64,000 nt of DNA from positions 1 through 64,000 of the IMG/VR virus record IMGVR_UViG_3300047994_000374; one strand, given 5' to 3'. A program made the position numbers and the translations under genes. The first letter of the stretch is position 1; each line of letters starts with the position of its first letter. The notes beneath the pieces are model-generated. The model saw nothing but the letters and a program-made list of their open reading frames with translations, had not been told where the DNA came from and made no database searches. Below are positions 23,280-62,866 of the stretch, piece by piece.

Positions 23280-23291
23280 GGCAAATGGGAA

Positions 23292-23657
23292 TTAATTCTG
23301 TTCGAATTTAGTATCAGATGTATGAACCCAAATTTTTACGGATACATCTGAACTATTATTATTTTCAACTTTAACGATCATATCTTCGGGCAAAGTAAGT
23401 GTAGCCGTCCCAATGCAATGAGTAGTATCTTTACTTTCCAGAGATACTTTTCCAGTTCCCTTGTCAATAAAAGAACATGAAATTACTTCATCATGTGTGG
23501 TCCAAACTTCTGTAATTGATTTGTCAACAGGAAGTTCGACATTAAATTGCGCCGAACTATGCGCTTTTACTTCACGAACATGTGTCATATCATAGGCTAA
23601 TGCGATAGATGATACAAACAGAATAGATAAAATAATGGTTGCGATTGAATTTTTCAT
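23292..23657 (-). CDS. secreted hypothetical protein
   Basis: Signal peptide MKNSIATIILSILFVSSIALA; GAGG 5' of the ATG. Confidence 0.7.
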   Translation of the reverse strand: MKNSIATIILSILFVSSIALAYDMTHVREVKAHSSAQFNVELPVDKSITEVWTTHDEVISCSFIDKGTGKVSLESKDTTHCIGTATLTLPEDMIVKVENNNSSDVSVKIWVHTSDTKFEQN

Positions 23658-23779
23658 TTAAAAACCTCTAATAGATAGATAATCATTCCACTTAAACTGT
23701 CAAGTCTCTTTCATCAGGTTTTTGTAAACATCGTATAGGTAGCCATTTTCATTGTCAAATTTACAAACAACCTCACTAT

Positions 23780-23860
23780 CGCAATAGAGGAATCGAACCT
23801 AAGATGGCACTATGGCGCGTGATCTACAGTCACGCCCGCCTCCATAACGGTCTTACATAC
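23780..23860 (-). tRNA. degenerate tRNA-Tyr(GTA)-like sequence
   Basis: Anticodon arm CGTGA-CTGTAGA-TCACG, long variable loop, GGTTCGATTCC T-loop; acceptor and T stems pair poorly. Confidence 0.45.
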
Positions 23861-24958
23861 CCATGAATGGGGCCGCCAAAGCAGCCCACAAACTAGTATC
23901 ATTTCTAATCTTAGTGAAATGCGCGATCTGTTCTGCTCGCCACCAGCACAACATGCAGGCTATAAGCCAAGCCCAGTATCCTACGACTTGCCAATGCTCT
24001 TCGGAGGTGCCCCACGGCACGCAGGCAAACCCGAATGGCGTCATCGACCAATACAGACAGCCATCCTGCGACTTAACCGTGCAGTGCAGCTGTCCTGTAT
24101 GGCGATTGCGGTAAATCACGGCTTGCTGTAGACGCTGTGACCGCCCGCGCCCGTCTGTATCTGTATAATTATTTGACATTTTTATTTAATTTTTCTGCCA
24201 ATGCATCTTGACGATACTTTTTTTCTTCTACTCGCAATTCAAATACCTTATCGGCTAACATTTTTTCCGCACGCGCATCTAAAAATTCTACAATGCAATC
24301 AGGATCATTTTCAATAACATCTTCATAATCCATTAGATGTAATTTGATTTTTGTTCCAGAACTGCCCATTCGAAAACCCGTGATATCATAATAAGGTTCT
24401 TTCGATTTGTCTCGAATAAGGATGATTGGAGTTCCGTCATAATACATGGGCAAAGCTTCTGCAAAGAAAATATCTCGAGTGCCAACGACAACTTCAGCTT
24501 CGCCCGTAGGATCTTCCTTATTAAGTCTTTCGATAAGATCTTTAGTTTTCATTAACAAACATGTCCATATCCTTGACCCTCGCAATAGCACTGGGTAAGG
24601 ACAGGGGCTGATTGATACATAAGGCATCGAACATAGTTATTCACATCACAACATTGATTTGAGTAAATGATAACTGGTTGCGCTTTAACATTTGGAGTTG
24701 CTACGACAAGTCCAACGATAACAAATATAATTATACTAATAAGTTTTTTCATTTTAAAATTTTCCTTTATTGAATAACTGCCGACACAACTTTTTCATTT
24801 ACGATTTCAACACAAACGCGATCTTCACGCTTGTCTTCTGGCCAACCTAAAAATCGTTCGCCATTCACAGACACCAAGCGCCAAATTAGATTTTTAAGCT
24901 CGCTTTTATTTTGAGCATCTCGTTTGCCGAGTCCAACTAAATCAGATACATTAACCAT
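23853..24958 (-). other. four small ORFs (23853-24179; MKTKDL start at 24552 ending 24169; secreted Cys-rich 24552-24752; 24767-24958)
   Basis: ORF track; the last resembles I78/potato-inhibitor-like proteins (EDKREDRVCVEIVNEKV). Confidence 0.5.
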
Positions 24959-25393
24959 TTTGTAATTTCCTTTAAAACCAAAGTTGTGTGTAATATTTCG
25001 CGAACAGCTCTAAACCCTTACGGGCATTGTCTTCATTTTCTTTAAATCGTAATCCACCAATGTCAAGTCGTTGATTGGAAGCTAACCATTCAAATGCTCT
25101 TACCATTTGATTAAGTGTGTGTTTCCATTCATCATCGGACATTTCTACTGGACCACCACGTTGTAGCTCGGCAAATCGTTTCAGCCGAGGCAGTATAACC
25201 TTTGCCAAATGGGAGTCAAGGTTTGGAATATCTTCTTCCGTCCAGCCATAAACAATTTTGTCGTAAAGTTTAATGGCATGGTGTTTGAGACGATCGTAGT
25301 TGGCTTGAGTAAAGTGTCTTTTTTAATTTTATCATAATTATATCTTTTTATCATTTTTTATGACTAAATATATCAATATTTGAATATATTTTT

Positions 25394-25966
25394 ATGAAAC
25401 TTTCAGAATGGGCAAAAAGAAATGGTTTAACTTATCAAACGGCTCATCGCTTATTTAAGGCGAATAAACTGCCTGCCGAAGGGAGGCAGCTTGCTACTGG
25501 CACTATTTTAATAGATGATAACGACTCATATCAAAAAGTCAACCTCAAAACTTATATTTATTCTAGAGTATCATCTCCTACTAAAAAAGAAGATCTCCAG
25601 AGACAAGCCGAGAGGTGCTCAAAATTTGCTGAAGCTAATGGATGGGAAATAGAAAAAGTTATCAAAGAAGTTGGCTCTGGGATGAATGACAACAGAAAAA
25701 AGTTAAACTCTCTTATTGACAAAGAGCCTAAAAGAATTATAGTTGAGCATAAAGACCGTCTCACAAGGTTTGGTTTTAATTATCTTGAAAGAACATTAAC
25801 TTTACTTAACTATGAGCTTATTGTGATTAATCGAGATCAAGAAAATGAAGCTGACTTAATGAAAGATTTGGTAGCAATCATTACCTCTTTTTGCTGCCGA
25901 CTTTATGGTTTACGCCGTGGGAAAACAAAGACAAAAGAAATTAAAGAACAAATTTTAATTAAATGA
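25394..25966 (+). CDS. tnpA: IS607 TnpA serine recombinase
   Basis: N-terminal HTH (MKLSEWAK..G..YQT), catalytic YSRVSS, EHKDRLTRFG, RLYG. Confidence 0.93.
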   Translation: MKLSEWAKRNGLTYQTAHRLFKANKLPAEGRQLATGTILIDDNDSYQKVNLKTYIYSRVSSPTKKEDLQRQAERCSKFAEANGWEIEKVIKEVGSGMNDNRKKLNSLIDKEPKRIIVEHKDRLTRFGFNYLERTLTLLNYELIVINRDQENEADLMKDLVAIITSFCCRLYGLRRGKTKTKEIKEQILIK

Positions 25967-27716: not shown

Positions 27717-27722
27717 CTAACT

Positions 27723-28216: not shown

Positions 28217-29607
28217 TTAAATGCGATTGACATCCTCCATATAAACGACAACATTTTTGAATGTATGTCTATCTACACAGTTTAGTCGAACCCTTTTTAG
28301 TTGTCCATAAATTTCTACACTATCCACAAAAAGCTCTGCATTGTCTTCAGTTCGTAGGACAATATCTCCATGAGTTAGTAGTCTTGCTTCCCTATACTTC
28401 ATTAATTTTTTGTAATCTCGTTTAATGTTTTTTTATAAGCTAATAATTGTGATTCTGCGAGTGAAGCTTTCTTATGCAGTTCTTCTGTCAAAATGCTCAA
28501 TAATAATTGGGCAGCATCTATATGTTTATCGGCTTTTGATTCCCTGTTCCCGATTTTAATTTTCCAATTATTTTGTCCCGCACTGCCGCCCGTATAAGTT
28601 AAATTTACTTCATCATCTGCCCCAGTTAAAGTCATATGAACTTTCCTGATGCTTCGAATAATTGTTTCTAATTCCATTAATTTAATTTTGAGTGGTAATG
28701 TCGCTGTTAAAATGCGTTTCTAATTGTTTGCCTAATGTTGTTAGCTTATAATAAATTTTACCGTTCTGATTGATTGGCTCTAAAATTCCGGCGTTGACTA
28801 ATTTTTCAGTAGCAATATTAAATTCTTTTTTACGCATACCCGTTTGTTGTTGGGTAAATAATCCTGTTAATGGGTCGGAATCAATCATTTTTAAACCCGA
28901 GCAATCTAAGTTCTTCACATAATTCTAAATGTTTTTTAAAAGCCGCAGATGAATTTAATTCCCAAAAATAATGTTTTTGTAGAATAGATTTCAGGTCAAA
29001 ACGAAAATCGCTCGAATAAACGAAAGTATCCCAGTCTTTGGTATTTTCACGATAAATTGTTCTTACAAACAAATTTCCAATTTTAGTCCGAATCGAAAAT
29101 GACATATTACTTCTCGCGAATGGTTTCAACCCGCCGCACAGCCCTAAATGGATCTGGATCGGGAGTGTTCGTCGCATGTTCATTATAAAATTCACAAATA
29201 ATAATAGGTTTTAGATGCTCGGGGTCATTAAACAAATACTCAATTCGACAACCATTAGGAATACCAACTGTATTTGGATCTCCATTATCTGCCTCTTCTT
29301 GAGTGGAAGTATTGTTTTCAGTGGTATCAACCGGAACTGAGCATGCACAAAGAATTGTTGCCATTGCGATAAAAATTAGATTCTTCATTGTTGTTATTAT
29401 TATTTTCTTCTATATTGTTTTTAGTTAATGGAGATCGAGCGTTTGATTTACTTCTGCTTCAGCAATTCGCTTTGCCCATCTAATCATTGTATCAACTCGG
29501 TAAATGGGAAAGTTTTCGGAAATTAAAACCATTCGAATAAGCCCTAAATTTACGCCCGATCGAATAGATTTAGATACAGTTTTAATCGTTTCTTCTATCT
29601 TTTTCAT
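28217..29607 (-). other. cluster of small hypothetical ORFs including lipoprotein 29107-29388
   Basis: ORF track; MKNLIFIAMATILCAC lipobox-like. Confidence 0.55.
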
Positions 29608-35786: not shown

Positions 35787-35795
35787 TTAAGTTAG

Positions 35796-35874: not shown

Positions 35875-37529
35875 TTAACCGATACTAAAACCACAAATAT
35901 TTTTAAATCGTTTTGGACATTTAATTTTCTTTGCCGTTATCATTTCCTTCTCTGTAGTCCTCTTCTTGCAAACGAATAAATACCAATTAGCTTTTAAATC
36001 ATAAGGATACAGTCCCCAATGAAGTTTTTCAATAACCGCCCACTTATAAAAGCCCGCCTCTTCAATATCGCCATAATTACCCATGACGGCAGCTTGGGCT
36101 TGTTTTAAAGTAGGATACCAGCCCACCGCTCTAAAATCAGATCGTTCTCCGTGTTCATTTGTATATACCCGCCCCGTAGATAGAACATAGATGGGTTTTG
36201 CTTTAGACCTCTTCATTTGGATTCTCATCAGGCAAAATATTTAATGAAATGGGAAACAGAATAAAGTTTGTTCCTACATTATCCCACTGACATTGCATAC
36301 TAAATAACTTTTTTGTTTCATTTAAATCATCACAAAGAACAGCAGGTCCATCATATTCATTGTTAGAAATGTAATGCAAGATTTTTAAACTTGAATGATG
36401 AGCTTCCTTTTCGAACTGAATTTGCTCCGGCTTGTGGTATAATTTTTGATTATAAATCATTCAAAACCTACCAACTTACTGTTTTACAAGTTGCTTTTAA
36501 GATAACAGTTTGAGCCTTTGCATCGCCCAAAATAATCTTCTCTTCATCTTCATCTGCGCCATTTATATCACAGAACGCCATTACAGCAATCCATCCAGCA
36601 CTTTTATTATGACAGTAGAATCCCGCAACCGACTGATTGAATTTCGTTGCCGTTAAACTTTGTCGTTCGCAAGTCCATGGAAAATTATCAAATGTATAAA
36701 ATAATCCGCTTAAACTTGGATCATCATCTGTCATAACTCTACCATCCGAATAGTCAGTTTCAAATGCCCAAGTCGTTCGGCTATGTAGTGTTTGTGCATC
36801 TGCCGAAACTGCAAAGCACATCAACATAAGACCAAACATCCATTTAAACATATTAGTTTCCACTTCCGACCAAGCTCTTCTCTACAAACGAATCAAGAGA
36901 CCAACCACAAGCCTCAATAAAGTTCTCAATCAAGAGGCACTGCTCTTCAATTGCTTTTGGATCTTCTTTTAGATCTTGCGAATAAAGCTTCTCAACTTCC
37001 AACGACACTTGCTCAAAAGTAATCATTTCAATTTTCCTGTTTCTACAAAGGTTTCCCAATAGGTTTTTAATTTATCCCAACTATCAACGCCCAGTGAATG
37101 ACCATCCGATTTACAGTCAATCATGAGTGTGCAAAAGATTTCAAACTCATTGGACTTCTGAATAGCTGAGCGCATCATAAAGTCAAGTTGAGTGTCTGAA
37201 AGTAAATGTTCAGCGCCAGGAGTCAATCCCCAAGCTTCAAAAAATTGTTTAACGAGTTCGAATTGCATTTAGTTATTAATTTCCCAATATATATTCCAGT
37301 CAAAAGCCAAAACTAATTTCAAAACATCATGGATATCTTTACGAACAACCCGACAACTATTGGGTAGTAAAACAATCCATCCACTCTCAAATGCAGGCTT
37401 ACATACAGTCATGCCTCGTTCTTCTGCCATCTCTTTAACGGATAAAGTCAATTGATGCAGAGTAGTTTTCTTATCCTCAAACATATCTTTTGTCTTTCGA
37501 ATGTGCAAATGGGAATTACCAAAATACAC
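35875..37529 (-). other. six hypothetical ORFs including secreted 36468-36863
   Basis: ORF track; signal peptide ..LMCFAVSADA. Confidence 0.55.
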
Positions 37530-39914: not shown

Positions 39915-40426
39915 TTAAACTGCAATCTTTTTGGTTAGATACAATACGAGTTCTTCGTCACGAGCTATGTTCCGTGATGCTTTAAGTTCAACTGCCATAT
40001 GGTAATACATTTTATTTGTGGCGTCAAGCAAATGATAGATGGAGGCAAAGTTCGCAATGAAGTTGTCCAAGAACTCATCGGACACTTTGTGATGAATGGG
40101 AAGAGGCGGATCGGAATTAGACTGAGCGCTCACTTTGAGTTGTCCTTTAAATAATTATCTAATCCTAAAAACTCAATACTATCTGCTGTTTGTTGTTTTA
40201 TTAATTTAAATTCTTCAATAGCTCTTCGTTTGAAATCTTTTAATCCATCTAACTCTTTTGCTATCTCCATTAAAGTTTTATGAGGATTAGCGGTTGTGAC
40301 GCCAAAAGCGGATGCACAAGCTTGGCGCCAATCATGAACTTCTTCTTTTGCTTTTTTAATATCATTAGGAAGTCCATAGGCATCATGAGTGTCTTTTTGT
40401 TTTTCTATTTCTTTTTTTGCGCGCAT
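39915..40426 (-). other. two hypothetical ORFs
   Basis: ORF track 39915-40133, 40130-40426. Confidence 0.5.
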
Positions 40427-40919: not shown

Positions 40920-41243
40920 TTAATTTCTAATAGCCCAACCAATGGATAAAATGAGGCGAGGAACAGCAACTTCTTCTACAGAATGGGGCATAATGTCTGG
41001 ACGAAAGAACTTAATGCGCTTGGTAGAAAAGATCGTGTCCCCTTTGAATTTGTCTTCGCCTTTGAGTAGAATATTAAGGCGATAATGTTTTTTGTTGGGG
41101 ACAGGATCTGTATGAGTAGGAATGTGTGAATGGGAAGGATATTTGATTAAGTATCCATCACAAGAGAGTAGGGCGCTTTGCCATAGGGTTAGTTTGCGAT
41201 AACCTGTGCCTTGACGACCTTCTTGCCAATTAAGTTTGAACAT
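40920..41243 (-). CDS. 2OG-Fe(II) oxygenase-like protein
   Basis: HTD...RLNILL...PHSV...RLILSIG (HxD...H...R). Confidence 0.75.
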   Translation of the reverse strand: MFKLNWQEGRQGTGYRKLTLWQSALLSCDGYLIKYPSHSHIPTHTDPVPNKKHYRLNILLKGEDKFKGDTIFSTKRIKFFRPDIMPHSVEEVAVPRLILSIGWAIRN

Positions 41244-42476: not shown

Positions 42477-42511
42477 GATTATGTTGATATGGATTTTTGT
42501 GAAATGGGAAA

Positions 42512-43078: not shown

Positions 43079-43122
43079 AAAATATACTACTTCGATGTCG
43101 TTTGATTATTTGGAAATGGGAA

Positions 43123-43749: not shown

Positions 43750-45950
43750 TAAACGTTAATTCCATTAAGAATAAACTTATCAGAATCCATATCAATATAC
43801 AAATGAAAGTCATCATAGGAACAAGCAAGCTGATTATATAGATGGTCCTCACCGTATGTTTCATAGTCTTCGTCAGTTAGTTTCATAAGCTCTTGTTCCA
43901 TCTTCTCTTGAACTTTCTCAAACGAGATCTTCTTTTTGAATGTTCTCTCATACACACAATGATCGAAGTCATTGGTTTCAAAATCATACTCGATAGTCCC
44001 GTCATTGTTCGATCGTTCTTTCAAATAAGAAAGAGCCAATTCTTTTGGAGTAGGTTGCACAGAAGCATTTGCCCAACTTTTTAATTGATTGAGTTTTTCT
44101 TCTAAATCAAATCCATCATGAGCAACCTTCGTCATACAATAAAGATTGCCCTTTTTAATAATCAAAGTTCCACCAGTCATTTGACATTCTCCTTATTGCA
44201 ACATTTATCATGTCCCTTGTGATGAAATCCAATCTTATCACAAAGAGTTTTAAATCGTTCATGCCACTTAGTATGAAGTTGTTTAAAGAACAGTCCAACC
44301 AATGGAAGTGCCGACAAAAACATAAACAAAGCTTCAGTTTCTTGAATACACCAGTGCATAATACACCTATTTCCTACAAACTTCAATAAAGGGAATGAAA
44401 CCCGTTAATGTCATCAAAATAAGTATTAGCACTTATTTCTTACTTTTGGCACTGGGTTCTAAAGAAATGGGAATCACTTCTTCTTGAGCGCCATGAGTTG
44501 CTGGAGCTGATGATCATAGCGTTGAGCTTGACGTTCGTGCTTTCGTTCCACTGCCTTGAGCAATTGATGTCCCTTTTGCTCAATGAGAAAGGTAGTCAGA
44601 CTTTTAGTGGGCTTGGTTCCCTTTGGTCTTGGAGATATAACATGAGTGTGTGGATGCGTATGATCGTTGTGGTCATGATTATGTTCAACTGCTTCTGGTG
44701 ATGCAACTTCATTCTCTTCCACTTCAACTAAAATTTCTTTTTCATTCATTTGTTTTATTCTTTCTTATTTTGTATTTCTGTTTTGTTAAGTATATCTATT
44801 CTAAATAATTTAATAGCTCTGATTTATTCTTTTTTCTTATCTGTCGAATATAAAGCAAAATACATTAGAAAATTCATAAACCAAATTCCTGCGCAGCCCC
44901 AATCCATGTATTTTTCCCAGACTTTTTCATCTGGCAGCTTGGTTGATAATAAAAAGCATCCAACCAAAACCAAACTATTTACAGCTTGAATTGACCACAA
45001 TTTCTGCGTGTGCTTTGAAAAAACCACCCATAAACAAAATAACATAAGGACATCAATTAGTAACCAACTCATGCTTATTCTCGTTCCGTTTCTGTTGTTG
45101 TATAGGCGCCCGAAGCCTTATTGAATAGATGTGCTAACTTTTTCTCTTCTTCTTTGGCACGATAATCCGAATCTAACTCATAAAGAATAAAATCAGATGA
45201 TGCTTCGAACTCTCCAAACTTAACTGTATTTCCATAATCTGTAAAGCCAATCTTTTCAAAGTCTGGTTTTAAAGTTCCCGTTGCATTAAACAAATCAAAT
45301 GGAGCAACAACACAAGTCCTATCGCCACGGAACAAGATAACATGTTCTGATAGAAAATCAACATAGCCAGAACGAATTAATGTTCTTTGACGATCGAATG
45401 GCAGCGCTTCAAGTTCAATTAGCTCTTCTGCTGGTAGCGTTTCAAGACAACCCATATCAGTTTTCATTTTGATTTCACCATATAATCATCTAATTTATAA
45501 TAAACATTACTATCATTGTTTTTAGAAAAATTGAAAGAATTTCCCTCATTATCTTTTAAGAAAATAAAGCGATCATCCTCTCCTACAATTTCATATTTTT
45601 TATTTTTACTGAAAGCGTTCTTTTTATATGTTGATTTGAATAATGATTTAATGCATTTATACATTTGATTTTAGCTTGTCCAATAGTTTAATCGCGGCAT
45701 CCAATCTCTTATCAAACGCCTTTTCTTCCTGCTCCACCTCATACATCAACTTATAAAACATTTCTTGACCATCATCAAAAGCCCTATCAAGATTAGCGCC
45801 CATCTCTCTAAGTTTTGTTCGTGCCCTGCCACCAACACGCATTGCCCACATAGCCTTTTCCCCATCTCTATCGCTCTCTAATGCGCAAATAGTATCGGCA
45901 TAAGCAAGCACTGCCCACCATAATCGCTCGTCGGTATTTTTATCCTTCAT
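43749..45950 (-). other. seven hypothetical ORFs
   Basis: ORF track; includes His-rich 44474-44749 and membrane protein 44824-45072. Confidence 0.55.
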
Positions 45951-47524: not shown

Positions 47525-47896
47525 TTATCCAAATGTTTGGAGAGTTCTTATTTGATTGTCCGTAATAGTTAATGGGAAAACATAATCGATAAAAATTAAA
47601 TTCTCTACCAAATAGGCGCCTGCGGAATTTTTAATCCAATAGGAGCAAGTAATTTCTTTATCGCCTGGATGAATTCGCCATTCAACCTCATGACTTCCCG
47701 TATCTTTGGCGACAACATAAGCATACCCCATATGAAATATGTTAAAGTTATTTCGATAAATTGTTAGCTTACAGTTACGACATTTTCTTTGTATTTGTAA
47801 AATATTATCATTATCAAATATCACAGTCAATTTCACGCGACAAAGCGGACAAGTTTTACGACGATAGATGTTGCGTAAATTAATTTCTTTGTTCAC
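47525..47896 (-). CDS. tail-family protein, LPxNTPFNIT-related
   Basis: CPLC/CRNC; FPLTIT; ends QIRTLQTFG. Confidence 0.75.
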   Translation of the reverse strand: MNKEINLRNIYRRKTCPLCRVKLTVIFDNDNILQIQRKCRNCKLTIYRNNFNIFHMGYAYVVAKDTGSHEVEWRIHPGDKEITCSYWIKNSAGAYLVENLIFIDYVFPLTITDNQIRTLQTFG

Positions 47897-48213: not shown

Positions 48214-48551
48214 TGGTATGTTAGGATTTTTTTAAGTCGTTCGATACTAATATCAATCGGCAGAGCAAATGGGAAATTAATCTTCCAATCAATATTTTGA
48301 CCAAAGACTTCCGTATAAGAACAAATTGCCGGATTCTCAAAGCCCGTAGACCAAATAATGATGTAGCGCTGCAAGTCTTTACTCATACGAATAGCATAAG
48401 TTCCGTCACCATAACACAACCTCACGATGCGAAACCTACACCGCACACATATTTTATGTATATCGCTACTATGCTTTTGGCTTTTGAGCGGTCGCCATTC
48501 TTTATTACAAAAAGGGCAATCATTTAGATTAAAGACTTCTTCAATGTTCAT
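48210..48551 (-). CDS. tail-family protein, LPxNTPFNIT-related
   Basis: CPFC/CVRC; LPIDIS; ends RLKKILTYQ. Confidence 0.75.
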   Translation of the reverse strand: MNIEEVFNLNDCPFCNKEWRPLKSQKHSSDIHKICVRCRFRIVRLCYGDGTYAIRMSKDLQRYIIIWSTGFENPAICSYTEVFGQNIDWKINFPFALPIDISIERLKKILTYQ

Positions 48552-52150: not shown

Positions 52151-52212
52151 ATTTTTATACCAAATTAGTACTACGTATGTTTAAGTATGTTTAAGTTTTT
52201 CTATACACCAAG

Positions 52213-53064: not shown

Positions 53065-53232
53065 TCATCCCCACGCTCTCAAATCATAACACTTGAAACT
53101 ACAATACCCAACCGGAGGTAAAGCTTTCTTTACTTCATCGTATTTAAATCCGCCAAGCATACGAAGGTCCGTCTTACAAACCAAACAATTTGTTACTGGG
53201 GCTGCCGTATAGTATGTGATTGTAAAAAGCAC
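53065..53232 (-). CDS. tail-family mini zinc finger (55 aa, GTG start, not in track)
   Basis: CLVC...YCSFKCYDLRAWG*; overlaps the 3' end of the protease gene. Confidence 0.6.
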   Translation of the reverse strand: MLFTITYYTAAPVTNCLVCKTDLRMLGGFKYDEVKKALPPVGYCSFKCYDLRAWG

Positions 53233-53714
53233 CAACTCGGATGTTCATTGCAGAGTAAATCAATATCTTCTTTTGTAATATAATTTGACATCTTATCCAC
53301 ATAAGGATTCATGATACTAAAACGATTCATATGATCTAATCCTAATGCGTGCCCAGTCTCATGGATGACAACCTTTAAGAACCAATCCTCCGGCATATCA
53401 TTTAATTTTATCCAAGCGACATTGTTAGGACTATACCAAGTTGTCCAACCAAGTTCATCATCAAATGGGAAACCAGGAAATATATAGATGGTATTGTATC
53501 GTGGTGGTGAATGATTGCTTGCTCCTTGAACTCTAAATTGAAATTCAGGAGGATGCGTGATGATTAATTTTTTCCATTTTAGTACGCCTTCTTCAATTTG
53601 ATTTACTTGATGCGGTGTAAAATCAGAAGAGATATAGACGGTATATTTGGCAGGGATAGTTTCCGCGCACCCTGTCAATAAAATTAAAAATAGAAACAAA
53701 TAAACTAAACGCAT
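53193..53714 (-). CDS. matrixin-like metalloprotease lipoprotein
   Basis: Lipobox LLTGC; HETGHALGLDH; Met-turn SIMNP. Confidence 0.87.
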   Translation of the reverse strand: MRLVYLFLFLILLTGCAETIPAKYTVYISSDFTPHQVNQIEEGVLKWKKLIITHPPEFQFRVQGASNHSPPRYNTIYIFPGFPFDDELGWTTWYSPNNVAWIKLNDMPEDWFLKVVIHETGHALGLDHMNRFSIMNPYVDKMSNYITKEDIDLLCNEHPSWCFLQSHTIRQPQ

Positions 53715-56850: not shown

Positions 56851-57010
56851 TGCCTCATTCACTATAATGCCTCAGTCTCAATGAGCAAATGGGAAAACGC
56901 TCTTCGTTTCTTTTTTTGTGGTATATGGTATATGTAAGCGATCATACGGCAGACGCGCAAAAGACCCGACATCTTTACGATATCGAGCCTGCGCAATTGC
57001 TATTTAGTTG

Positions 57011-57574: not shown

Positions 57575-57669
57575 CGTTGCTCATCATATCGTTCTTTAAA
57601 TTTTTGTGGTGGGTTAAATGGGAATGGGAATAGTTAGAGGGTGATGTAGGAAATTGATTTGATTGCGCG

Positions 57670-57703
57670 AAGGCTCCTACATTACGGTATTTGTAGGAGC
57701 CTT
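57670..57703. terminator. stem-loop, probable terminator
   Basis: AAGGCTCCTACA-loop-TGTAGGAGCCTT between paralogs 1 and 2. Confidence 0.6.
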
Positions 57704-58273: not shown

Positions 58274-58531
58274 TTTTTTGTTTTGTTTGTTTGACCCGCA
58301 GTTCGTATCGGGTGTCTATGGCTGTGGGTTTGATATGAATGGGAACCTTTATAAGTTAGTCGGTTTATGACACACTGAACTGTGCACGCGGTGAAACTTG
58401 TCTGCTCGTGCTGCCGGATCAAACGGAAACGGGTTGGCGATCTCACTTGACTTCTCCTCTAGACGGTTGTTGTAGGGGCAAACTGAACCCCTTACTTACG
58501 GCTCAGATGGTTATAGGTCAAGGGCTGAAAT

Positions 58532-58590: not shown

Positions 58591-59618
58591 TTAATTTGAA
58601 TTCATCGCTCTCAATATTTCTGCGTGAGCACGATGCTTGAACTTTCTCCAAGCCCAGTGAGCCAATGCGGGAACTTCATCCTCTGATACAAATCGAGCAA
58701 GGATGGTGCTTCGTTGTTCGTAAGTCAGCTCGTTCCATCTTTCTTCGTCGGAAAGGCGTCCGATCATCTTCGTTTCAAATTTCACCGCTCGGAATGATGC
58801 ACTTTGTCGACTCCGCACAGTTCGCATTGATTTGTTTCCTTGTCGAAAGAATGTTCGCATTCACCACTTAGGAATGACAACAAAATATCTCCTGCTTTCG
58901 GATCCTTTCTATGTTTGGTTGCATAGGTATGAATCGTGTCGAACAAGGCAAGATTGAAGCCTGCAGAACTAATTTTAGCTTTCTTCTGTTGCATGTGTTG
59001 GTTCCTCTGGGAAGAAACAGTTGATATCGGCACTGTGATAGTAGTCACCATCACGCCAAACGACAAGTGGATTTTGAATGGGTTCATCATCTAAAACGAT
59101 TCCACTCGTAAGATGATAGACCACAATCAGTTTCATCTTGTCAGCATAGTAGAACGGTGCCTTCGTTGGATTTGTAGTAGCAATCTTCGTTCCCTTCAAT
59201 AGTAAAACTTGATCGAACTGTTTGAATGGAAGAGAACTGATAGCATGAAAGCCTACATATCTCACTGGGCTTTACACTCTGCTACATAATCTTCACTGTC
59301 ATTAATAGTAGGCTCAACCGGATAACAAAACTTCTGGATGAGTTCTTCTTTTGAGATCTGGCTTTCATTATCACCAGCTCGATTAAAAGCGATTAGATCA
59401 TCAACCGAATCGTGAATGCGAGAGCTGGTTCCGATTTCTTCCACCCGCTCCAATTGCTTCTCGAGTTCGTCCATAGAGCTACGACCATACTCCTCCTTAT
59501 AGTATGCCTTAAACTCTTCCAGGCTCATACCATAAGTAATCGGAGCATCCACCACTGTGCTCCATTCCAAATACCAATCCTGTTGAGAATCAGTAAGCTT
59601 AATAATCATTCTACTCAT
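58591..59618 (-). other. four hypothetical ORFs
   Basis: ORF track 58591-58860, 58782-59090, 58975-59265, 59262-59618. Confidence 0.55.
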
Positions 59619-59701
59619 AAGTTATCTCTGTTCTTTTGTTTATAAATGGGAGCCGTAAGGGTATCCCAGGGCGCGGAATTTACTGCGATCGACCTTATCC
59701 A

Positions 59702-59887: not shown

Positions 59888-60975
59888 CGGATGATTTTAA
59901 TTGGGGATATGGGATTGAATTTGATATTGTTCTCGCTCAACCAACTCAAGTATTCCGGATCAGGTTGCCCCAAAACATAAATAGAATTACGAGTGCGAAC
60001 AAGATTGCCGTCAGCATCTTGAATTTCAGATGTGGTTACGGCTTTGGTTGAGCCTTCTTTAAATCCCTGCAACCGCCTCACAGAAAGCTCTGGGGCGCTA
60101 TAAGGACTACTGTCAAAGACGACGGACCAATTATTAATTTTATATACAGGTTTGCTCATTTAAAAATTACTTTATATCCAATCTTTTTGAATAGTTTCTT
60201 TAATTCTGCTTCTCGTTTTTCGTCAGAGATTAAGAGTTCATCATTGACTTCGATCATAGCATTACATAGATCTGAATCATTTTGAACCGCACCCCTAACT
60301 TCAAGAAGTTTATTTGGCCACTTACTTTTTTCATATCGATTTGCATAAGAATTCATTCGCGAAGCAGGCGAATAATAATATGTAAGTTCTTTTGTAGTAT
60401 AACCACAAGATCGTCCAAGGAAACCCAAGCAACACATCTTGCCACCAGGCTTCCGCAGCATTGAATTATTTTTACCACGCCACCACATTTTACGATCAAT
60501 AACTAAAGTTTTCATTTTCTTTCACTCAACTTTTCTAACAGCCAATTCAAAACACCAGTCCAAGTTTTACCACAGAGAATTGATCCATAAGTATTCTCGT
60601 CAGCAAGCTCTTTGATTTCATTTAATACTGATTGCCTACCTTCATCCCAGCCTTGGCTTTTGGCTGAGTAAATTCTGCCGTGATTAGATAGATCGGAATA
60701 AGGATTTTTCACTTTGATTTCCATCCCTCTGAACGAATAATGGCATCCCACTCACGCGCAAGACTATACATACTCTTTTTATTATGATCGTCAATCGTAG
60801 CAGAAGATGAATGAGAATGTCCCAAATTATAACAAAGATTAGACATCATCGTTCCAACACGACGAAGCTCTTTGATTTCTTGACGCAATTGTTTTTTGGT
60901 TGCAGGTTTCATTTGATATGTCTCGCTTTTCATTTCTTCTTCATATAAGTTAATCATGAATGGGAATTGGCACAA
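59884..60975 (-). other. four hypothetical ORFs
   Basis: ORF track; ATGA-coupled. Confidence 0.55.
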
Positions 60976-61753
60976 GATTTTTAAAGACGCCGCAGACTTG
61001 TTCGCTTGTTACATAGGCGACTTGAAAGCGTTCCATCTGCCGAGTGTTGTCACGAAGAAGAGCATCACCACCATTCTCCAATGCTTCCGCACCAGTTGCA
61101 TCCAGAATGATACGCGAGTCAATCTTATTCGCCACTCGACATGCAATACGAGCCGGGAAGTTTGCTTTGATTTCGCCCTTGATAATCTGGGCAGAAGGTC
61201 GCTGGGTCGCAAGAACAATTGAAATACGAGCAGCCCTACACTTTTGAGCTAACCGAAGAAGCCGATTGTAAAACATATTGCCCTTGTCCTGCATAATCAA
61301 ATCAGCAAACTCATCGATCATCAAAACAACATAAGGCATATCTTTCATTGCGCTTCCATTACGGGCAAGCTCATATCGATTGTCCATTAGCTCAATCATC
61401 ATGTCCAATACATTGACTGCTTCCGCATACGAGTAATGAACCTTGACATTCGGAAATGACTTGTCGTAATGATGGAACTCTACATTCTTTGGATCGATAA
61501 GATGAATGATCGTGTTGTTGTAATTGAAAAGATTGGCAATGATATTGTGCATCAAAACGCTTTTACCAGAGCCAGTCGTTCCAGCAATGATCATGTGGGG
61601 ATTTTGCGCCAAGTCCATCCACACACGCGCGCCTGTGATTGATTGACCGAGCAAACAAATCAAGTCGCCATCAGGAACTTTTCGATTGGTAAAATAATCA
61701 AGGAGATGAACTGTCTTTCGAATCTGTCGCGAATGTAAGCTCATAGTGTACAT
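60950..61753 (-). CDS. stand-alone FtsK/SpoIIIE-type ATPase domain
   Basis: PHMIIAGTTGSGKS, IDPK, MIDEFADL, ATQRPS, IKANFPARI, GAEALE..GDAL; AGGAG RBS. Confidence 0.92.
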   Translation of the reverse strand: MYTMSLHSRQIRKTVHLLDYFTNRKVPDGDLICLLGQSITGARVWMDLAQNPHMIIAGTTGSGKSVLMHNIIANLFNYNNTIIHLIDPKNVEFHHYDKSFPNVKVHYSYAEAVNVLDMMIELMDNRYELARNGSAMKDMPYVVLMIDEFADLIMQDKGNMFYNRLLRLAQKCRAARISIVLATQRPSAQIIKGEIKANFPARIACRVANKIDSRIILDATGAEALENGGDALLRDNTRQMERFQVAYVTSEQVCGVFKNLVPIPIHD

Positions 61754-61794
61754 CTCCTATAAATGTGAATGATTAAAAGTTAAATGGGAAACGA

Positions 61795-62166
61795 TTAGGG
61801 CTGAAGGTTATAATCTTTAGCTACGTCGTTAAGATGCGCTTCCCAATGTTCAACAGGAGCGGCGTCATGAATTCTTTGAAGTCGCCCGATCATTAGGCGC
61901 ATCGTATCCGTCATTTCGATTCCACTTTTTGTCAAAGCATCTCGAACAATTGATGAGTCAGAATAATTCAATTCAATTTCTGGCGTATAAGCTTCATCAG
62001 AAATCAAACAGCCCACTGCACATTTCAAACCGCCATCACCACGATAAGCACAAGTGGCTTCCTTTGGCAGCGCTCGTTCCGGCTTACAAACGCTTCTCTG
62101 TTTTTGAAAAAGGAGATGCGCTTTTACTTTGTTAAAAACTTCTTGCATATGTTCTTGACTTGACAT
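61795..62166 (-). CDS. phage hypothetical protein
   Basis: CAYRGDGGLKCAVGCLI...LQRIHD; GGAGG RBS. Confidence 0.7.
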   Translation of the reverse strand: MSSQEHMQEVFNKVKAHLLFQKQRSVCKPERALPKEATCAYRGDGGLKCAVGCLISDEAYTPEIELNYSDSSIVRDALTKSGIEMTDTMRLMIGRLQRIHDAAPVEHWEAHLNDVAKDYNLQP

Positions 62167-62238
62167 GAGACCTCCTTTTCTTTTTGTTGGATTGTATAGT
62201 AAAGGCAGTTTAAACTCTTGCCCAGGATTTATTTAATA

Positions 62239-62766
62239 TCAGGCAGTCGCGGCAGCTTCATCAACAACCGGAGCGCTCTCAACAGCAGCATTCTTAACAC
62301 GACGAATGCCGACGCGCTTAACCAACTCCCACTCGGCACTTGCATTCACATAACGACGAACCGTATGGAGCGTCTTGTTTGCAGCGACGCCAGTTGATTG
62401 GCTCACACGATCTGCAAGCTGCTGAGTCGTCAATTGCTCTTCATCTGACTTGGTTGCAAGGATGGCTTCTGCTGCACCATTGATCATCTGCTCTTCTGCA
62501 GTGAAGGGACGCTTACCATCTTTGCGGTAGACGCCACCTGCGCGTCCCGCCTTAACCTCAAGATCATCACGCCCGGTCAAGTAAGCATTGAGCACCGAAG
62601 TCACGAACCCCGGATTCTCTCCAGTAGCTTCCGCAACGATCTTGGTCAAGGACATCTTGGTGACATACCCGCCCTCTTCAAGCTGTTTCTCAAGCTCGGT
62701 CTCGACATGCTGCGCAACGTTCACTGCAAGCTCTGCAACCGCGTTAAAACCATCTTCGTTTGACAT
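62239..62766 (-). CDS. tandem winged-helix-like DNA-binding protein, paralog 3
   Basis: YLTGRDDLEVKAGRAGGVYRK; second repeat degenerate. Confidence 0.7.
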   Translation of the reverse strand: MSNEDGFNAVAELAVNVAQHVETELEKQLEEGGYVTKMSLTKIVAEATGENPGFVTSVLNAYLTGRDDLEVKAGRAGGVYRKDGKRPFTAEEQMINGAAEAILATKSDEEQLTTQQLADRVSQSTGVAANKTLHTVRRYVNASAEWELVKRVGIRRVKNAAVESAPVVDEAAATA

Positions 62767-62866
62767 ATGTATATCCTACTTCTTTCTTATTTGTTATTGT
62801 TTGTGAGACTTGATTATTCTTGTCTCGAATTGTTATTGTACTTCTAATTTTTATGAAATGGGAAAT

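What the first reader, a model, noticed from the sequence alone, without database searches (positions are those of the whole stretch)
23283..62864. Strand-specific 9-mer TTCCCATTT concentrated at gene boundaries
I count at least 14 exact copies, all on the transcribed minus strand, and noticed none on the other strand. A rough expectation from base composition is below 1 per 64 kb. Four copies directly abut a stop codon (23283, 37507, 43114, 44465) and three lie 1-4 nt after one (42502, 61782, 62856). Two are deeper in intergenic DNA (56887; 57616, tandem). Near-matches occur at 58337 and 59643. Distance to the next start varies from 3 to about 90 nt, so it is not an RBS, and flanks are not conserved. 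Inference: a phage-specific promoter element, an RNA processing or protein-binding site, or an oriented translocase signal (an FtsK-type ATPase is encoded here).
Basis: partly seen in the sequence, partly recalled or inferred. Interest (0 to 1): 0.68.

Follow-up and report, generated by a model that had tools for sequence, protein, structure and literature searches.

The report
Megaphage promoter-like motif before small genes
A nine-letter DNA word (TTCCCATTT) sits in one orientation in front of dozens of small genes in one arm of a 394-kb uncultivated phage; related phages carry their own versions around the same CCCAT core, so it is most likely a phage-specific gene-expression signal (probably a promoter) whose reader protein is unknown.

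Summary
The window has 14 exact TTCCCATTT copies, all on the minus (coding) strand, against 0.4 expected under a codon-preserving null. The window is the first 64 kb of a 394-kb phage genome. Genome-wide the count is 56 sense to 6 antisense (8-mer TTCCCATT: 86 to 8), concentrated at 8-112 kb and densest at 64-92 kb, just outside the window.

The contact with stop codons is incidental. The real constraint is on the downstream gene: the start codon lies 22-23 nt after the motif, with a Shine-Dalgarno between (29/86 sites against 1.6% of control positions).

Related megaphages (portal about 70% identical) lack TTCCCATTT. They carry cognate one-strand motifs with the same CCCAT core, at the same 27-28 nt phase, in a syntenic, GC-elevated, ORFan-rich arm. 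Antisense copies are purged in all of them (G008: 4 seen, 88 expected), while sense copies are tolerated inside genes.

This fits a DNA-level, orientation-dependent transcription signal best. It argues against an RNase site, an anti-SD hairpin or a translocase guide. No phage RNA polymerase or reader protein was found, and no RNA data could be obtained, so the promoter reading remains an inference (about 0.55).

The parts
8193..8201 (-). exact TTCCCATTT copy
   Evidence: Lies inside the small ORF 8054-8218, 28 nt downstream of a GATATATA motif at 8229. The next long ORF starts 189 nt away. Not phased.
19815..19823 (-). variant TTCCCATTG
   Evidence: The ATG of the 70-codon ORF 19579-19791 lies 23 nt downstream. 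Phased.
23283..23291 (-). exact copy abutting a TAA stop
   Evidence: The stop of ORF 23292-23657 abuts the motif. An ATG opening 56 codons lies only 3 nt downstream. Atypical spacing.
29502..29510 (-). exact copy inside an ORF
   Evidence: Lies inside ORF 29425-29607. The next gene start (29388) is 113 nt downstream.
36247..36255 (-). exact copy in the 3' end of an upstream ORF
   Evidence: Lies inside ORF 36203-36460. The ATG of the 117-codon ORF 35875-36228 is 18 nt downstream.
37507..37515 (-). exact copy abutting a TAA stop, phased
   Evidence: The stop of ORF 37516-37959 abuts the motif. An ATG opening 71 codons lies 22 nt downstream.
40094..40102 (-). variant TTCCCATTC
   Evidence: An ATG opening 37 codons lies 15 nt downstream.
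41128..41136 (-). variant TTCCCATTC inside an ORF
   Evidence: Intragenic by my gene calls.
42502..42510 (-). exact copy 1 nt after a TAA stop, phased
   Evidence: The ATG of the 163-codon ORF 41985-42476 lies 25 nt downstream.
43114..43122 (-). exact copy abutting a TAA stop, long gap downstream
   Evidence: The stop of ORF 43123-43749 abuts the motif. No start codon within 45 nt; the next ORF is 169 nt away. The gap has no significant fold.
44465..44473 (-). exact copy abutting a TGA stop
   Evidence: The stop of ORF 44474-44749 abuts the motif. The next ATG-ORF lies 105 nt away.
47570..47578 (-). variant TTCCCATTA
   Evidence: Intragenic by my gene calls.
48267..48275 (-). exact copy in the 3' part of an ORF
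   Evidence: Lies inside ORF 48210-48551. The next gene's ATG (48213) is 53 nt downstream.
53463..53471 (-). exact copy inside an ORF
   Evidence: Lies in the middle of ORF 53193-53714.
56887..56895 (-). exact copy deep in intergenic DNA
   Evidence: Lies 115 nt after the previous stop. Only a GTG opening 45 codons lies at 24 nt.
57616..57630 (-). overlapping tandem TTCCCATTCCCATTT
   Evidence: 57616 is exact and 57622 is the variant ending in C. A terminator-like hairpin lies upstream. The ATG of the 187-codon ORF 57011-57574 lies 41 nt downstream.
58337..58345 (-). variant TTCCCATTC
   Evidence: The ATG of the 184-codon ORF 57719-58273 lies 63 nt downstream.
59644..59652 (-). variant CTCCCATTT, phased
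   Evidence: The ATG of ORF 59262-59618 lies 25 nt downstream (coordinates).
60958..60966 (-). variant TTCCCATTC running into an ATG
   Evidence: Lies inside the 3' end of the FtsK-like ATPase gene. The ATG of ORF 60709-60957 follows directly.
61782..61790 (-). exact copy 4 nt after a TAA stop, upstream of the FtsK-like ATPase gene
   Evidence: ATGs lie at 28 and 37 nt (ORFs of 267 and 264 codons), with GGAG before the second. The product matches FtsK_SpoIIIE at E 1.8e-26.
62856..62864 (-). exact copy 2 nt after a TAA stop, with an 89-nt A-rich leader
   Evidence: The ATG of ORF 62239-62766 lies 89 nt downstream. The leader is weakly folded.
63345..63353 (-). variant TTCCCATTA inside an ORF

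Best explanation
TTCCCATTT is this phage's version of a clade-wide signal with core CCCAT. It is read on double-stranded DNA in one orientation and acts as the promoter, or the core of the promoter, for the small and mostly ORFan genes of a hypervariable arm with raised GC (probably early or host-takeover genes, plus a few others such as the DNA ligase gene).

**Shown**
- The word is about 20-40 times over-represented under a codon-preserving null.
- It is almost confined to the coding strand and is strongly intergenic.
- It ends 22-23 nt before start codons, with a Shine-Dalgarno in between.
- Relatives carry cognate words at the same phase in the syntenic arm.
- Antisense copies are purged, while sense copies inside genes are tolerated.

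**Inferred**
- Transcription starts within or a few nt after the word. This gives a minimal leader of at most about 23 nt that still holds the SD, so tight packing produces the sharp 22-23 nt mode.
It has drifted in flank specificity between lineages: TTCCCATTT, CTCCCATTCAC, NCCCATC and TTCCATCGATCGACAA.
- The conserved sigma-70-family protein more likely reads the second, clade-invariant motif (C/T)GATATATA, found before replication and structural genes.
- In about ten cassettes at 83-91 kb the word lies 50-58 nt downstream of an extended -10-like TGGYATRR that follows a terminator. I read this as tandem early (host-type) and phage-specific promoters, as T4 has before many early genes.
For: **Enrichment and strand**
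- Window: 14 sense and 0 antisense copies against a codon-preserving null of 0.38.
- Genome: 56 sense and 6 antisense. The 8-mer is 86 to 8 against a null of 9.4.
- 57-58 of 86 sites lie in the 11-14% of the genome that is non-coding.

**Region**
- 74 of 86 sites lie at 20-113 kb, where GC is raised.
- The genes there have almost no homologues in a relative.

**Phase**
- The ATG follows the 9-mer at 23 nt in 18 sites, 22 nt in 9 and 24 nt in 5.
- 29 of 86 sites fall within a 2-nt window against 1.6% of control positions, P about 1e-30.
- About half of the candidate starts at 64-92 kb carry the motif (26 of 54; public gene calls).
- The cassettes show that the tie is to the downstream start, not the upstream stop.

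**Relatives (sense/antisense counts)**
- G007: CTCCCATTCAC, 63/3.
- G008: CCCATC, 352/4.
- G016 arm: 207/3.
- G012: TTCCATCGATCGACAA, 23/2.
- The phase mode is 27-28 nt after the C of CAT in G000, G007, G008 and G016; the 23 G012 copies show no clear mode (2/23 at 26-32 nt). All lie in GC-raised arms downstream of a conserved release-factor gene.

**Antisense purge against the codon-preserving null**
- G000: 8 seen, 19.0 +- 3.7 expected.
- G007: 3 seen, 9.2 expected.
- G008: 4 seen, 88 +- 8 expected.
- G016 arm: 3 seen, 20 expected.
- Sense copies occur inside coding sequence (22, 9, 77 and 113 respectively).

**Other points**
- The leaders are unstructured, with mean MFE -2.4 kcal/mol, not below shuffled-motif controls. 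There is no consensus fold.
- A second, separate promoter-like class, GATATATA, lies 14-37 nt before genes at 113-394 kb and is shared by relatives. The sigma gene is conserved in G006, G007 and G008.
Against: - No transcript ends are known.
- No reader was identified. No RNA polymerase was detected: PF00562 and PF00940 gave nothing, there is no DFDGD or HDS motif, and the one DxDGD lies in a dockerin-like protein. There is no MotA, AsiA or RegB homologue. Pfam found no transcription factor among 150 arm proteins.
- The word resembles no known -10 or -35 element, and nothing is conserved at a fixed distance on either side.
- The 22-23 nt spacing is much tighter than that of the GATATATA class (14-37 nt). 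This could instead point to a link with translation.
- In the cassettes the word would lie inside the 5' UTR of a transcript from the upstream host-type promoter. An RNA-level role is therefore possible there.
- In G008 and G016, 85-90% of copies are not phased. Many are only 60-140 nt apart in non-coding arrays, which is odd for promoters of protein genes.
- Inside the window itself only 4 of 22 sites are phased.
Confidence: 0.55

Rival explanations
1. The motif acts in RNA. The word UUCCCAUUU in the 5' UTR would be bound by a phage or host protein (a translational operator or enhancer, as RegA acts on T4 early mRNAs). Alternatively it would be cut by a sequence-specific endoribonuclease that trims polycistronic or long-leader early transcripts to a standard leader of about 23 nt.
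For: - The distance to the ATG is very tight, with a mode of 22-23 nt in G000 and the same phase in G007, G008 and G016. It is tighter than for the GATATATA class.
- In about ten cassettes the word lies 50-58 nt downstream of an extended -10-like element, so it would be transcribed.
- In the 65-83 kb array there are no terminators between genes, so polycistronic RNA is likely.
- The word is predicted to be single-stranded.
Against: - Antisense-strand copies are purged (G008: 4 seen, 88 expected; G000: 8 seen, 19 expected). Selection on sense RNA does not predict this, unless the complementary word is avoided for some separate reason.
- Sense copies are enriched inside coding sequence (G016 arm: 113; G008: 77). 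That would be harmful for a cleavage site.
- Several copies have no ORF at the canonical distance (43114, 44465, 62856 and the G008 non-coding units). A purely translational element does not fit these.
- There is no anti-SD pairing and no conserved structure.
- No RegB homologue was found.
Confidence: 0.22
2. The repeated word is mainly a recombination or cassette-shuffling site. It would provide short identical sequences at the 5' edge of each small gene, letting modules be exchanged or captured in the hypervariable arm. This is what has been proposed for the PeSL promoter/stem-loop cassettes of T4-type phages. Any expression role would be secondary.
For: - The arm is ORFan-rich and almost unshared with a relative.
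- It differs in composition from the rest of each genome.
- It lies at a syntenic position in the relatives.
- The cassettes of terminator, promoter-like element and motif at 83-91 kb resemble PeSLs (PMC2839356, PMC4122927).
- A serine resolvase, two TnpB genes and homing endonucleases are encoded nearby.
Against: - A 9-nt identity is very short for homologous exchange.
- Recombination alone does not explain the fixed 22-23 nt phase to the ATG or the genome-wide purge of antisense copies.
- The one strain-level comparison available was 99.98% identical, so it showed no shuffling at motif boundaries.
Confidence: 0.08
3. The word is an oriented DNA signal unrelated to gene expression. It could be a guide for a translocase or packaging motor (KOPS-like), a Chi-like anti-nuclease signal, or a site kept in one orientation to escape (or to exploit) a nuclease that cuts only between head-to-head sites, as with the EcoP15I sites of T7 (own knowledge).
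For: - Strand polarity is near-total and, in G008, genome-wide (352 to 4, with 1 antisense copy seen against about 65 expected outside the arm).
- An FtsK-type ATPase is encoded in the window and is conserved in relatives.
- Most G008 and G016 copies are not phased to genes.
Against: - The sites are concentrated in one arm rather than spread along the genome.
- They are strongly intergenic.
- They are phased to start codons with P from 1e-7 to 1e-30 in four genomes.
- Escape from a head-to-head nuclease predicts polarity without enrichment. The sense copies are in fact 4-15 times enriched.
- Bacillus phage G, the closest cultured relative, shows no such polarity.
Confidence: 0.07

Closest known systems
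T4 late promoters (TATAAATA read by gp55 with gp33/gp45) and similar single-block phage promoters such as phiEco32 (own knowledge)
   Same: - A single short, sharply conserved block with no -35 partner.
- It lies a few tens of nt before start codons of many genes.
- Tens of copies occur on the coding strand.
- A phage factor redirects the host polymerase.
   Different: - The sequence is unrelated: C-rich with core CCCAT rather than AT-rich and -10-like.
- It serves an arm of small ORFan genes that looks early rather than late.
- Its spacing to the ATG is much tighter.
- No gp55-like or other reader was found, and the only sigma gene probably reads another motif.
- The transcription start is unknown.
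T4 middle promoters (MotA box at -30 plus sigma-70 -10; MotA/AsiA)
   Same: - A 9-bp box that replaces the -35 element.
- Dozens of copies lie before early or delayed-early genes, often in tandem downstream of host-type early promoters.
   Different: - No -10-like information lies 11-13 bp downstream of the word.
- With the ATG only 22-23 nt away and an SD in between, a box at -30 would leave the SD untranscribed.
- The MotCF match is below threshold and spans two ORFs. No AsiA was found.
PeSL cassettes (promoter-early stem-loop) of T4-type phages (PMC2839356, PMC4122927)
   Same: - Composite stem-loop plus promoter units flank small ORFan genes in hyperplastic regions.
- The sequences are lineage-specific.
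- The roughly ten units at 83-91 kb (hairpin with T-run, then TGGYATRR) fit this picture.
   Different: - PeSL promoters are sigma-70 -35/-10 pairs.
- TTCCCATTT is an extra, far more strictly conserved element 50-58 nt further downstream. It also occurs without any stem-loop or host-type promoter.
- Shuffling at these sites was not seen here.
Promoter families of phage-encoded RNA polymerases (T7/T3/SP6; phiKZ and AR9 early or late promoters; own knowledge)
   Same: - Related phages carry related but distinct consensus words around a shared core, as expected when a polymerase or factor co-evolves with its site.
- Copies are strictly oriented and sit before many genes of one temporal class.
   Different: - No single-subunit or split multi-subunit polymerase gene was detectable.
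- The conserved block is only 6-13 bp, against 17-23 bp for T7-type promoters.
One-orientation Type III restriction sites in T7 (CAGCAG; own knowledge)
   Same: Near-total polarity of a short asymmetric word over a whole phage genome (G008: 352 to 4).
   Different: - Here the retained orientation is also 4-15 times enriched.
- It is clustered in one arm, intergenic, and phased to start codons.

Membership tests
Sigma-70-type (-35/-10) bacterial promoter | A -10 hexamer resembling TATAAT, with A at -11 and T at -7 | tested here: not met
   The invariant block is TTCCCATT. No reading frame of it, or of the next bases, gives both key positions of TATAAT. This is direct reading of the sequence.
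Sigma-70-type (-35/-10) bacterial promoter | A -35 element about 17 bp upstream of the -10 | tested here: not met
   Per-column information upstream of the word is at most 0.42 bit from -40 to -3. The semi-conserved CCAC block in the cassettes lies at a variable 17-24 nt.
T4-type middle promoter (MotA-dependent) | An activator box centred near -30, with a -10 element 11-13 bp downstream | tested here: not met
   No -10-like signal follows the word. The SD lies between the word and the ATG, so a start about 25 nt downstream would exclude it.
T4-type middle promoter (MotA-dependent) | MotA and AsiA homologues are encoded | tested here: not met
   MotCF matched at only 13.3 bits (cut-off 25), across two small ORFs with an in-frame TGA. 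AsiA gave nothing, though that control rang in no genome, so absence is not proven.
T4-type late promoter (gp55 class) | A single conserved block of about 8 bp at -10, with no -35, in many copies before genes | tested here: inconclusive
   The architecture matches: a single block a short distance from the ATG. The position relative to the transcription start is unknown because no RNA data were available.
T4-type late promoter (gp55 class) | A gp55-like minimal sigma and gp33/gp45 partners are encoded | not tested
   Only Sigma70_r2 was searched, giving one hit: the 247-aa r2+r4 protein. I had no gp55 model accession to hand.
Promoter of a phage-encoded RNA polymerase (T7-like or phiKZ-like) | A phage RNA polymerase gene is present | tested here: not met
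   PF00940 and PF00562 gave no hit. The PF00940 control rang nowhere. There is no DFDGD or HDS[FYWA] motif in ORFs of 150 aa or more. The single DxDGD lies in a protein with a dockerin-like match. Five proteins of 1250-2368 aa had no PHROG match apart from one tail-fibre protein; the three checked against PDB sequences (2368, 2078, 1654 aa) had no match and the 1250-aa one only a weak dockerin-like match. A very divergent enzyme cannot be excluded.
Promoter of a phage-encoded RNA polymerase (T7-like or phiKZ-like) | Related phages have related but distinct consensus promoters | tested here: met
   TTCCCATTT (G000), CTCCCATTCAC (G007), NCCCATC (G008, G016) and TTCCATCGATCGACAA (G012).
PeSL regulatory cassettes | A stem-loop plus an early promoter flanking ORFan genes in hyperplastic regions | tested here: met
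   This holds for about ten units at 83-91 kb: a hairpin with T-run, then TGGYATRR. The arm is unshared with a relative. It does not hold for most motif copies, which have no stem-loop.
PeSL regulatory cassettes | Indel or replacement breakpoints between close phages fall at the cassettes | tested here: inconclusive
   The only close strain contig is 99.98% identical over 10.6 kb, so there are no breakpoints to score.
KOPS- or Chi-like oriented chromosome signals | Spread along the replicon, polar with respect to replication or ends, and unrelated to gene starts | tested here: not met
   74 of 86 copies lie in 93 kb. The sites are intergenic and phased to the ATG, P about 1e-30.
Shine-Dalgarno / ribosome-binding site | A purine-rich match to the anti-SD 5-10 nt before the start | tested here: not met
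   The word is pyrimidine-rich and ends 22-23 nt before the ATG. Ordinary GGAG/AGGA sites lie between them.

The most novel reading that the evidence does not exclude
The CCCAT-core word is the site of an unrecognised, clade-specific machine that reads DNA polarity. One possibility is a dedicated transcription system with no detectable similarity to known phage polymerases or sigma factors. It would serve a compositionally foreign, cassette-like arm, including arrays of about 110-nt non-coding units in relatives. The other possibility is a scheme in which the phage keeps every site in one orientation and so distinguishes its own DNA from host DNA. In either case the arm would be built and renewed by motif-bounded gene cassettes.
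Probability: 0.12. Interest if true: 0.85.

Novelty: new variant of a known kind. Interest (0 to 1): 0.62.

Why it matters
Huge uncultivated phages are known almost only from gene lists, and how they time their gene expression is unknown. This motif gives four things.

- **A regulon marker.** It is a sequence-level marker for about 60-90 small genes, many missed by gene callers, that are probably expressed together in a hypervariable arm. The arm looks like a host-takeover arsenal.
- **A clade-wide system.** Relatives share the core, the phase and the syntenic arm, but the flanks differ. This is the pattern expected if a reader and its site co-evolve. It makes the unknown reader findable by covariation or pull-down.
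- **An unusual selection signal.** Antisense copies are almost completely purged (4 seen, 88 expected in one relative). That is rarely seen for promoters and hints at strong orientation-dependent activity.
- **Practical use.** The rule 'motif + 22-23 nt + ATG' improves start and small-gene annotation in these genomes.

Tried and rejected
**Motif structure and RNA**
- Anti-SD hairpin between UUCCC and the SD: mean leader MFE is -2.4 kcal/mol, weaker than with a shuffled motif, and the pairing probability is 0.2. Rejected.
- Conserved RNA structure in the cassette leaders: RNAalifold found no pairs. Rejected.
- Known RNA families: only a tRNA matched across the window and the next 60 kb. Nothing matched in the G008 unit array.
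- Long gaps after motif copies 43114, 44465, 62856 and 56887 folded as RNA: z-scores were -0.15, -1.6, -3.8 and -1.3. Only the A-rich 62856 leader stands out, at just -10.7 kcal/mol, and no convincing structured RNA is seen.

**Search for a reader or polymerase**
- Phage RNA polymerase: PF00562 and PF00940 gave no hit and catalytic-motif regexes found nothing convincing. The one ADIDGD lies in a protein with a dockerin-like calcium-loop match. Giant proteins against PDB sequences and PHROGs gave nothing.
- MotA, AsiA and RegB: none found. The weak MotCF match spans two ORFs.
- The sigma factor as reader of this motif is unlikely. It is conserved in relatives whose CCCAT flanks differ, while GATATAT is invariant. 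It has no homologue in cultured phages and no specific subfamily.
- Conserved arm-flank proteins as candidate readers: the 209-aa protein has only viral hypothetical relatives and a faint kinase-like lead, and the 168-aa protein gave nothing.

**Relatives and host**
- Exact TTCCCATT in 13 relatives: no enrichment. This first looked like absence of the system. De novo search then found the cognate words.
- Relatives found through a 299-aa arm protein and through the FtsK-like ATPase: no shared motif in those stretches.
- Strain variation at motif boundaries: the second contig is 99.98% identical.
- Host inference from TnpB in bacterial genomes: no relative found.
- Bacillus phage G: no polarity of CCCATC or TCCCAT.
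- The plus-strand copy at 104793 as proof that the motif follows gene orientation: its ATG at +22 opens only 25 codons. This is weak.

**RNA evidence**

Full report
**1. The observation**

The window holds 14 exact copies of TTCCCATTT, all on the minus strand and none on the plus strand. Dinucleotide-preserving shuffles give 1.97 on average and at most 6.

I called genes crudely. It gives 0.38 +- 0.61 in the window, with a maximum of 3 in 300 trials.

The stop-codon contacts, the tandem at 57616/57622 and the near-matches at 58337 and 59644 are as described. Two qualifications apply. Five of the 14 copies lie inside predicted ORFs. One-mismatch variants as a class are not enriched (50 seen, 39 expected), so the word is sharply defined.

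**2. The genome**

The window is bases 1-64000 of a single 394,192-bp IMG/VR virus record. It is 92% complete and 36% GC. Nearly all genes are on the minus strand.

The genome encodes:
- portal and large terminase, family-B DNA polymerase, DnaB-like helicase, RNR, NAD-dependent ligase and rIIA;
- a TubZ/PhuZ-like tubulin and one sigma-70-family protein;
- collagen-like tail fibres.

No cultured phage is close. The best portal match is Bacillus phage G at 33% identity.

**3. Genome-wide distribution**

| Word | Sense | Antisense | Codon-preserving null |
|---|---|---|---|
| TTCCCATTT | 56 | 6 | 2.9 |
| TTCCCATT | 86 | 8 | 8.8-9.4 |

Copies are concentrated at 8-112 kb. They are densest at 64-92 kb, just beyond the window, with about one copy per 600 bp. 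Of the 86 8-mer sites, 57-58 lie in the 11-14% of the genome that my calls leave non-coding.

Position -1 is A or T in 52 of 56 copies and +1 is A in 31 of 56. Nothing further out is conserved, and there is no -35-like or -10-like partner at a fixed distance. Variants found at the canonical place change mostly position 1 (A or C) or positions 8-9. TCCCAT is constant.

**4. What the motif is tied to**

In the dense region, a start codon opening at least 30 codons follows the 9-mer at:
- 23 nt in 18 sites;
- 22 nt in 9 sites;
- 24 nt in 5 sites;
- 25-28 nt in 8 sites.

An ordinary GGAG/AGGA Shine-Dalgarno lies between. Counted from the C of CAT, 29 of 86 sites have the ATG at 27-28 nt. Only 1.6% of all positions do (binomial P about 1e-30).

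Public gene calls for 72-93 kb show the motif before about half of the called genes. Several further copies precede uncalled ORFs of 31-49 codons at exactly 23 nt. Of 54 candidate starts at 64-92 kb, 26 carry the motif.

About ten units at 83-91 kb have a fuller layout:
1. a stop codon;
2. a hairpin with a T-run;
3. TGGYATRR, which looks like an extended -10 element;
4. a CA-rich leader of 50-58 nt with no predicted structure;
5. the motif;
6. 23 nt;
7. the ATG.

In these units the motif keeps its distance to the downstream start but lies about 115 nt from the upstream stop. The element belongs to the 5' side of the downstream gene.

Inside the window the rule is weak, with 4 of 22 8-mer sites phased.

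**5. A second promoter-like class**

An unbiased look at the sequence upstream of genes finds one other word, (C/T)GATATATA (35 sense, 15 antisense). It is spread over 113-394 kb, 14-37 nt before the portal, helicase and giant structural genes among others. The same word recurs in relatives, and the sigma gene is conserved in them at about 56% identity. My inference is that the sigma factor, or the host's primary sigma, reads this invariant class and not the CCCAT class.

**6. Relatives**

Portal searches bring in a large clade of IMG/VR megaphages at about 70% portal identity. None is enriched for TTCCCATT.

The arm at 20-110 kb has almost no homologues in relative G006. G006 also lacks the conserved genes that flank the arm, so that part of its genome is probably missing.

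A de novo search for words upstream of starts then showed cognate motifs:

| Genome | Word | Sense/antisense | Region |
|---|---|---|---|
| G007 (481 kb) | (G)CTCCCATTCAC(G)G | 63/3 | one arm, 420-480 kb |
| G008 (447 kb) | (A)CCCATC | 352/4 | mostly 20-140 kb |
| G016 arm | NCCCATC | 207/3 | downstream of release-factor gene |
| G012 arm | TTCCATCGATCGACAA | 23/2 | downstream of release-factor gene |

The 26-kb piece of G010 shows only the TGGCATACT-type element.

The ATG phase is the same in G000, G007, G008 and G016, with a mode 27-28 nt after the C of CAT (P from 1e-7 to 1e-30); G012's 23 copies show no clear mode. In G000, G007 and G008 the motif-rich arm lies at the same syntenic place, downstream of a conserved release-factor gene and its neighbours. 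The G016, G012 and G010 stretches were themselves fetched downstream of each record's release-factor homologue.

The arms also have raised GC:
- G000: 0.38-0.41 against 0.35 elsewhere;
- G007: 0.55 against 0.42;
- G008: up to 0.59 against 0.34;
- G016: 0.47-0.49 against 0.29.

So the element is a conserved feature of the clade. Its core and geometry are fixed, and its flanks differ between lineages.

**7. Orientation selection**

Observed copies against the codon-preserving null:

| Genome | Sense seen | Sense null | Antisense seen | Antisense null |
|---|---|---|---|---|
| G000 | 86 | 9.4 | 8 | 19.0 +- 3.7 |
| G007 | 63 | 6.3 | 3 | 9.2 |
| G008 | 352 | 53 | 4 | 88 +- 8 |
| G016 arm | 207 | 13 | 3 | 20 |

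In G008 the purge extends over the 306 kb outside the arm, with 1 antisense copy seen against about 65 expected. Sense copies are tolerated inside coding sequence (22, 9, 77 and 113 respectively). Bacillus phage G shows the opposite, ordinary bias (26 forward, 99 reverse).

Selection acts on both strands of the DNA with opposite sign. That is what an orientation-dependent DNA signal predicts: stray antisense promoters are harmful and extra sense ones are harmless. A ribonuclease site predicts something else, because sense copies inside genes would be harmful. A ribosome-pairing enhancer also fits badly, because internal sense copies would be avoided and the other strand would not matter.

**8. 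Mechanism**

The best-supported reading is a phage-specific promoter or promoter core. Initiation would occur in or just after the word. The resulting leader of at most about 23 nt keeps the SD. The sharp mode at 22-23 nt would then be the minimum workable spacing in a tightly packed arm. The distribution does have a hard lower edge and a tail towards longer distances.

The cassettes would be tandem host-type and phage-specific promoters. T4 has early and middle promoters arranged this way before many early genes (own knowledge; compare PMC4122927 on PeSL and PmSL units).

Steps shown: enrichment, strand, position, phase, conservation of the class, and the antisense purge.

Steps inferred: that RNA starts there, and who reads the word. 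I found no reader:
- no RNA polymerase;
- no MotA, AsiA or RegB homologue;
- no Pfam transcription factor among 150 arm proteins;
- nothing informative for the conserved proteins flanking the arm.

No RNA evidence could be obtained.

**9. Rivals**

- **RNA-level role (operator or processing site).** This stays possible. The spacing is tighter than for the GATATATA class, and in the cassettes the word would be transcribed from upstream.
- **Recombination or cassette shuffling, as proposed for PeSLs (PMC2839356, PMC4122927).** This may be an added consequence of the repeats. It does not explain the phase or the purge, and the one strain comparison was uninformative.
- **Oriented DNA signal (translocase guide, Chi-like, or one-orientation escape from a head-to-head nuclease).** This fits the polarity. 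It does not fit the clustering, the intergenic position or the phase.
- **Anti-SD hairpin and structured leader.** Both were tested and rejected.

**10. What remains odd**

In G008 and G016 most copies are not phased. Consecutive copies are often only 60-140 nt apart. One stretch of G008 holds five non-coding units of 109-171 nt. Each begins with CCCATC and contains a hairpin, the units are unrelated in sequence, and none matches Rfam or a tRNA.

The near-total antisense purge in G008 is also stronger than I would expect for a six-base promoter core. These points keep a more novel reading open (see the section on the most novel reading).

**11. Novelty and verdict**

Phage-specific promoter words before batches of genes are a known kind. 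This one differs in five ways:
- its sequence, with a C-rich CCCAT core;
- no detectable polymerase or factor;
- a fixed phase to the start codon shared across a clade;
- its link to a syntenic ORFan arm with raised GC;
- a strong purge of antisense copies.

I found no description of it. A literature search for the word returned only unrelated primer sequences, and the jumbo-phage transcription overview PMC7824862 does not mention such a motif.

I file it as a new variant of a known kind, with interest 0.62 and confidence 0.55 in the promoter reading.

- No contig looked human.
- No alternative genetic code was used.

Noticed in passing
G000 106874-107962 (-), = L003:2874-3962:-; outside the window: The phage encodes a class-I peptide chain release factor (PCRF 2.2e-39, RF-1 2.5e-24). 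It is conserved at 50-55% identity in relatives G007, G008, G010, G012 and G016, and it marks the boundary of the motif-rich arm. Long ORFs are intact under the standard code, so I saw no sign of recoding. It is not known whether the factor is RF1-like or RF2-like.
   Followed up: partly
window 3388-4551 (-) and 14271-15443 (-): Two TnpB-like genes (HTH_OrfB_IS605, OrfB_IS605 and Cas12f1-like TNB domains), 387 and 390 aa, lie in the phage genome. No close relative was found in the bacterial genome collection.
   Followed up: partly
G000 113-394 kb, e.g. 280064, 153686, 198912; in the window at 8229, 39455, 42970: A second upstream word, (C/T)GATATATA (35 sense, 15 antisense), lies 14-37 nt before the portal, helicase, giant structural and other genes. 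It often has an A-rich tract 16-18 nt upstream. It is shared as TGATATAT by relatives G006, G007 and G008. It is probably the promoter class read by the conserved sigma-70-family protein (G000 144697-145440) or by the host's primary sigma.
   Followed up: partly
G000 60-100 kb; G007 420-480 kb; G008 20-140 kb; G016 246-276 kb: The motif-rich arms have much higher GC than the rest of each genome (up to 0.59 against 0.34 in G008). IMG/VR labels G007, G008, G009 and G016 'provirus', perhaps because of these islands. The origin of the arms is unexplained: they could be foreign cassettes, or early genes tuned to the host.
   Followed up: partly
L144:9395-10007 (-) (relative G008): Five consecutive non-coding units of 109-113 nt (one of 171 nt). 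Each begins with CCCATC and holds a hairpin, and the units are unrelated in sequence. None matches Rfam or a tRNA. Genome-wide, consecutive CCCATC copies are most often 60-140 nt apart. This may be an array of small RNAs or of promoter-plus-terminator mini-units.
   Followed up: partly
L002:280-7127 (G000 84.2-91.1 kb); also window 57640-57700: About ten PeSL-like cassettes: a hairpin with T-run, then TGGYATRR (extended -10-like), then TTGC..GCAA. A related unit, TTGGCATACTCTGTGC..CTTGCA, recurs at least ten times in the arm of relative G010. There its ends (GGCAT..ATGCC) could also pair as a hairpin.
   Followed up: partly
L188: about 16900-17200 (relative G010): A tandem array of a 9-nt unit (GCGCCAGCG) lies within the arm, between two of the TGGCATACT units.
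   Followed up: no
G000 154822-156195 (-), = L005:10822-12195:-: A TubZ/PhuZ-like tubulin (Tubulin 1.7e-11, TubZ-like_C 6.6e-07) in a phage with no detectable phiKZ-type RNA polymerase.
   Followed up: no
G000 240575-250593 (-): Collagen-like repeat tail-fibre genes (497 and 1946 aa). They account for the most over-represented strand-specific k-mers in the genome, such as CCTTGAGGTCC.
   Followed up: no
G000 65679-66230, 89056-89643 and others in the arm: At least four small paralogues in the arm carry weak matrixin or reprolysin-type zinc-metallopeptidase matches (PF00413; best E 2.6e-07).
   Followed up: no
G000 280071-283031 (-), = L007:16071-19031:-: The large terminase is 986 aa. Its ATPase part (residues 185-547) and nuclease part (546-958) match separately, and there is an unmatched N-terminal region of about 180 aa. 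An insertion or fusion is possible.
   Followed up: no
window 52191-52550 (-): A 50-aa Cys-rich (zinc-ribbon-like) ORF and a 64-aa ORF lie in the same frame, separated by one TGA and four codons. A sub-threshold MotCF match (13 bits) spans both. I judged it chance.
   Followed up: yes
G000 108584-109213 (-), = L003:4584-5213:-: A 209-aa protein is conserved at 55-57% in G007 and G008, next to the release-factor gene. It has only viral hypothetical relatives. The nearest annotated Atlas clusters are small phage kinase families (T7-kinase-like). This is a lead only.
   Followed up: partly
window 35795-35865, 37977-38059, 50687-50761 (-): Three tRNA genes (Arg-TCT, Tyr-GTA, Thr-TGT) lie among the small genes. 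None is directly preceded by the motif.
   Followed up: no
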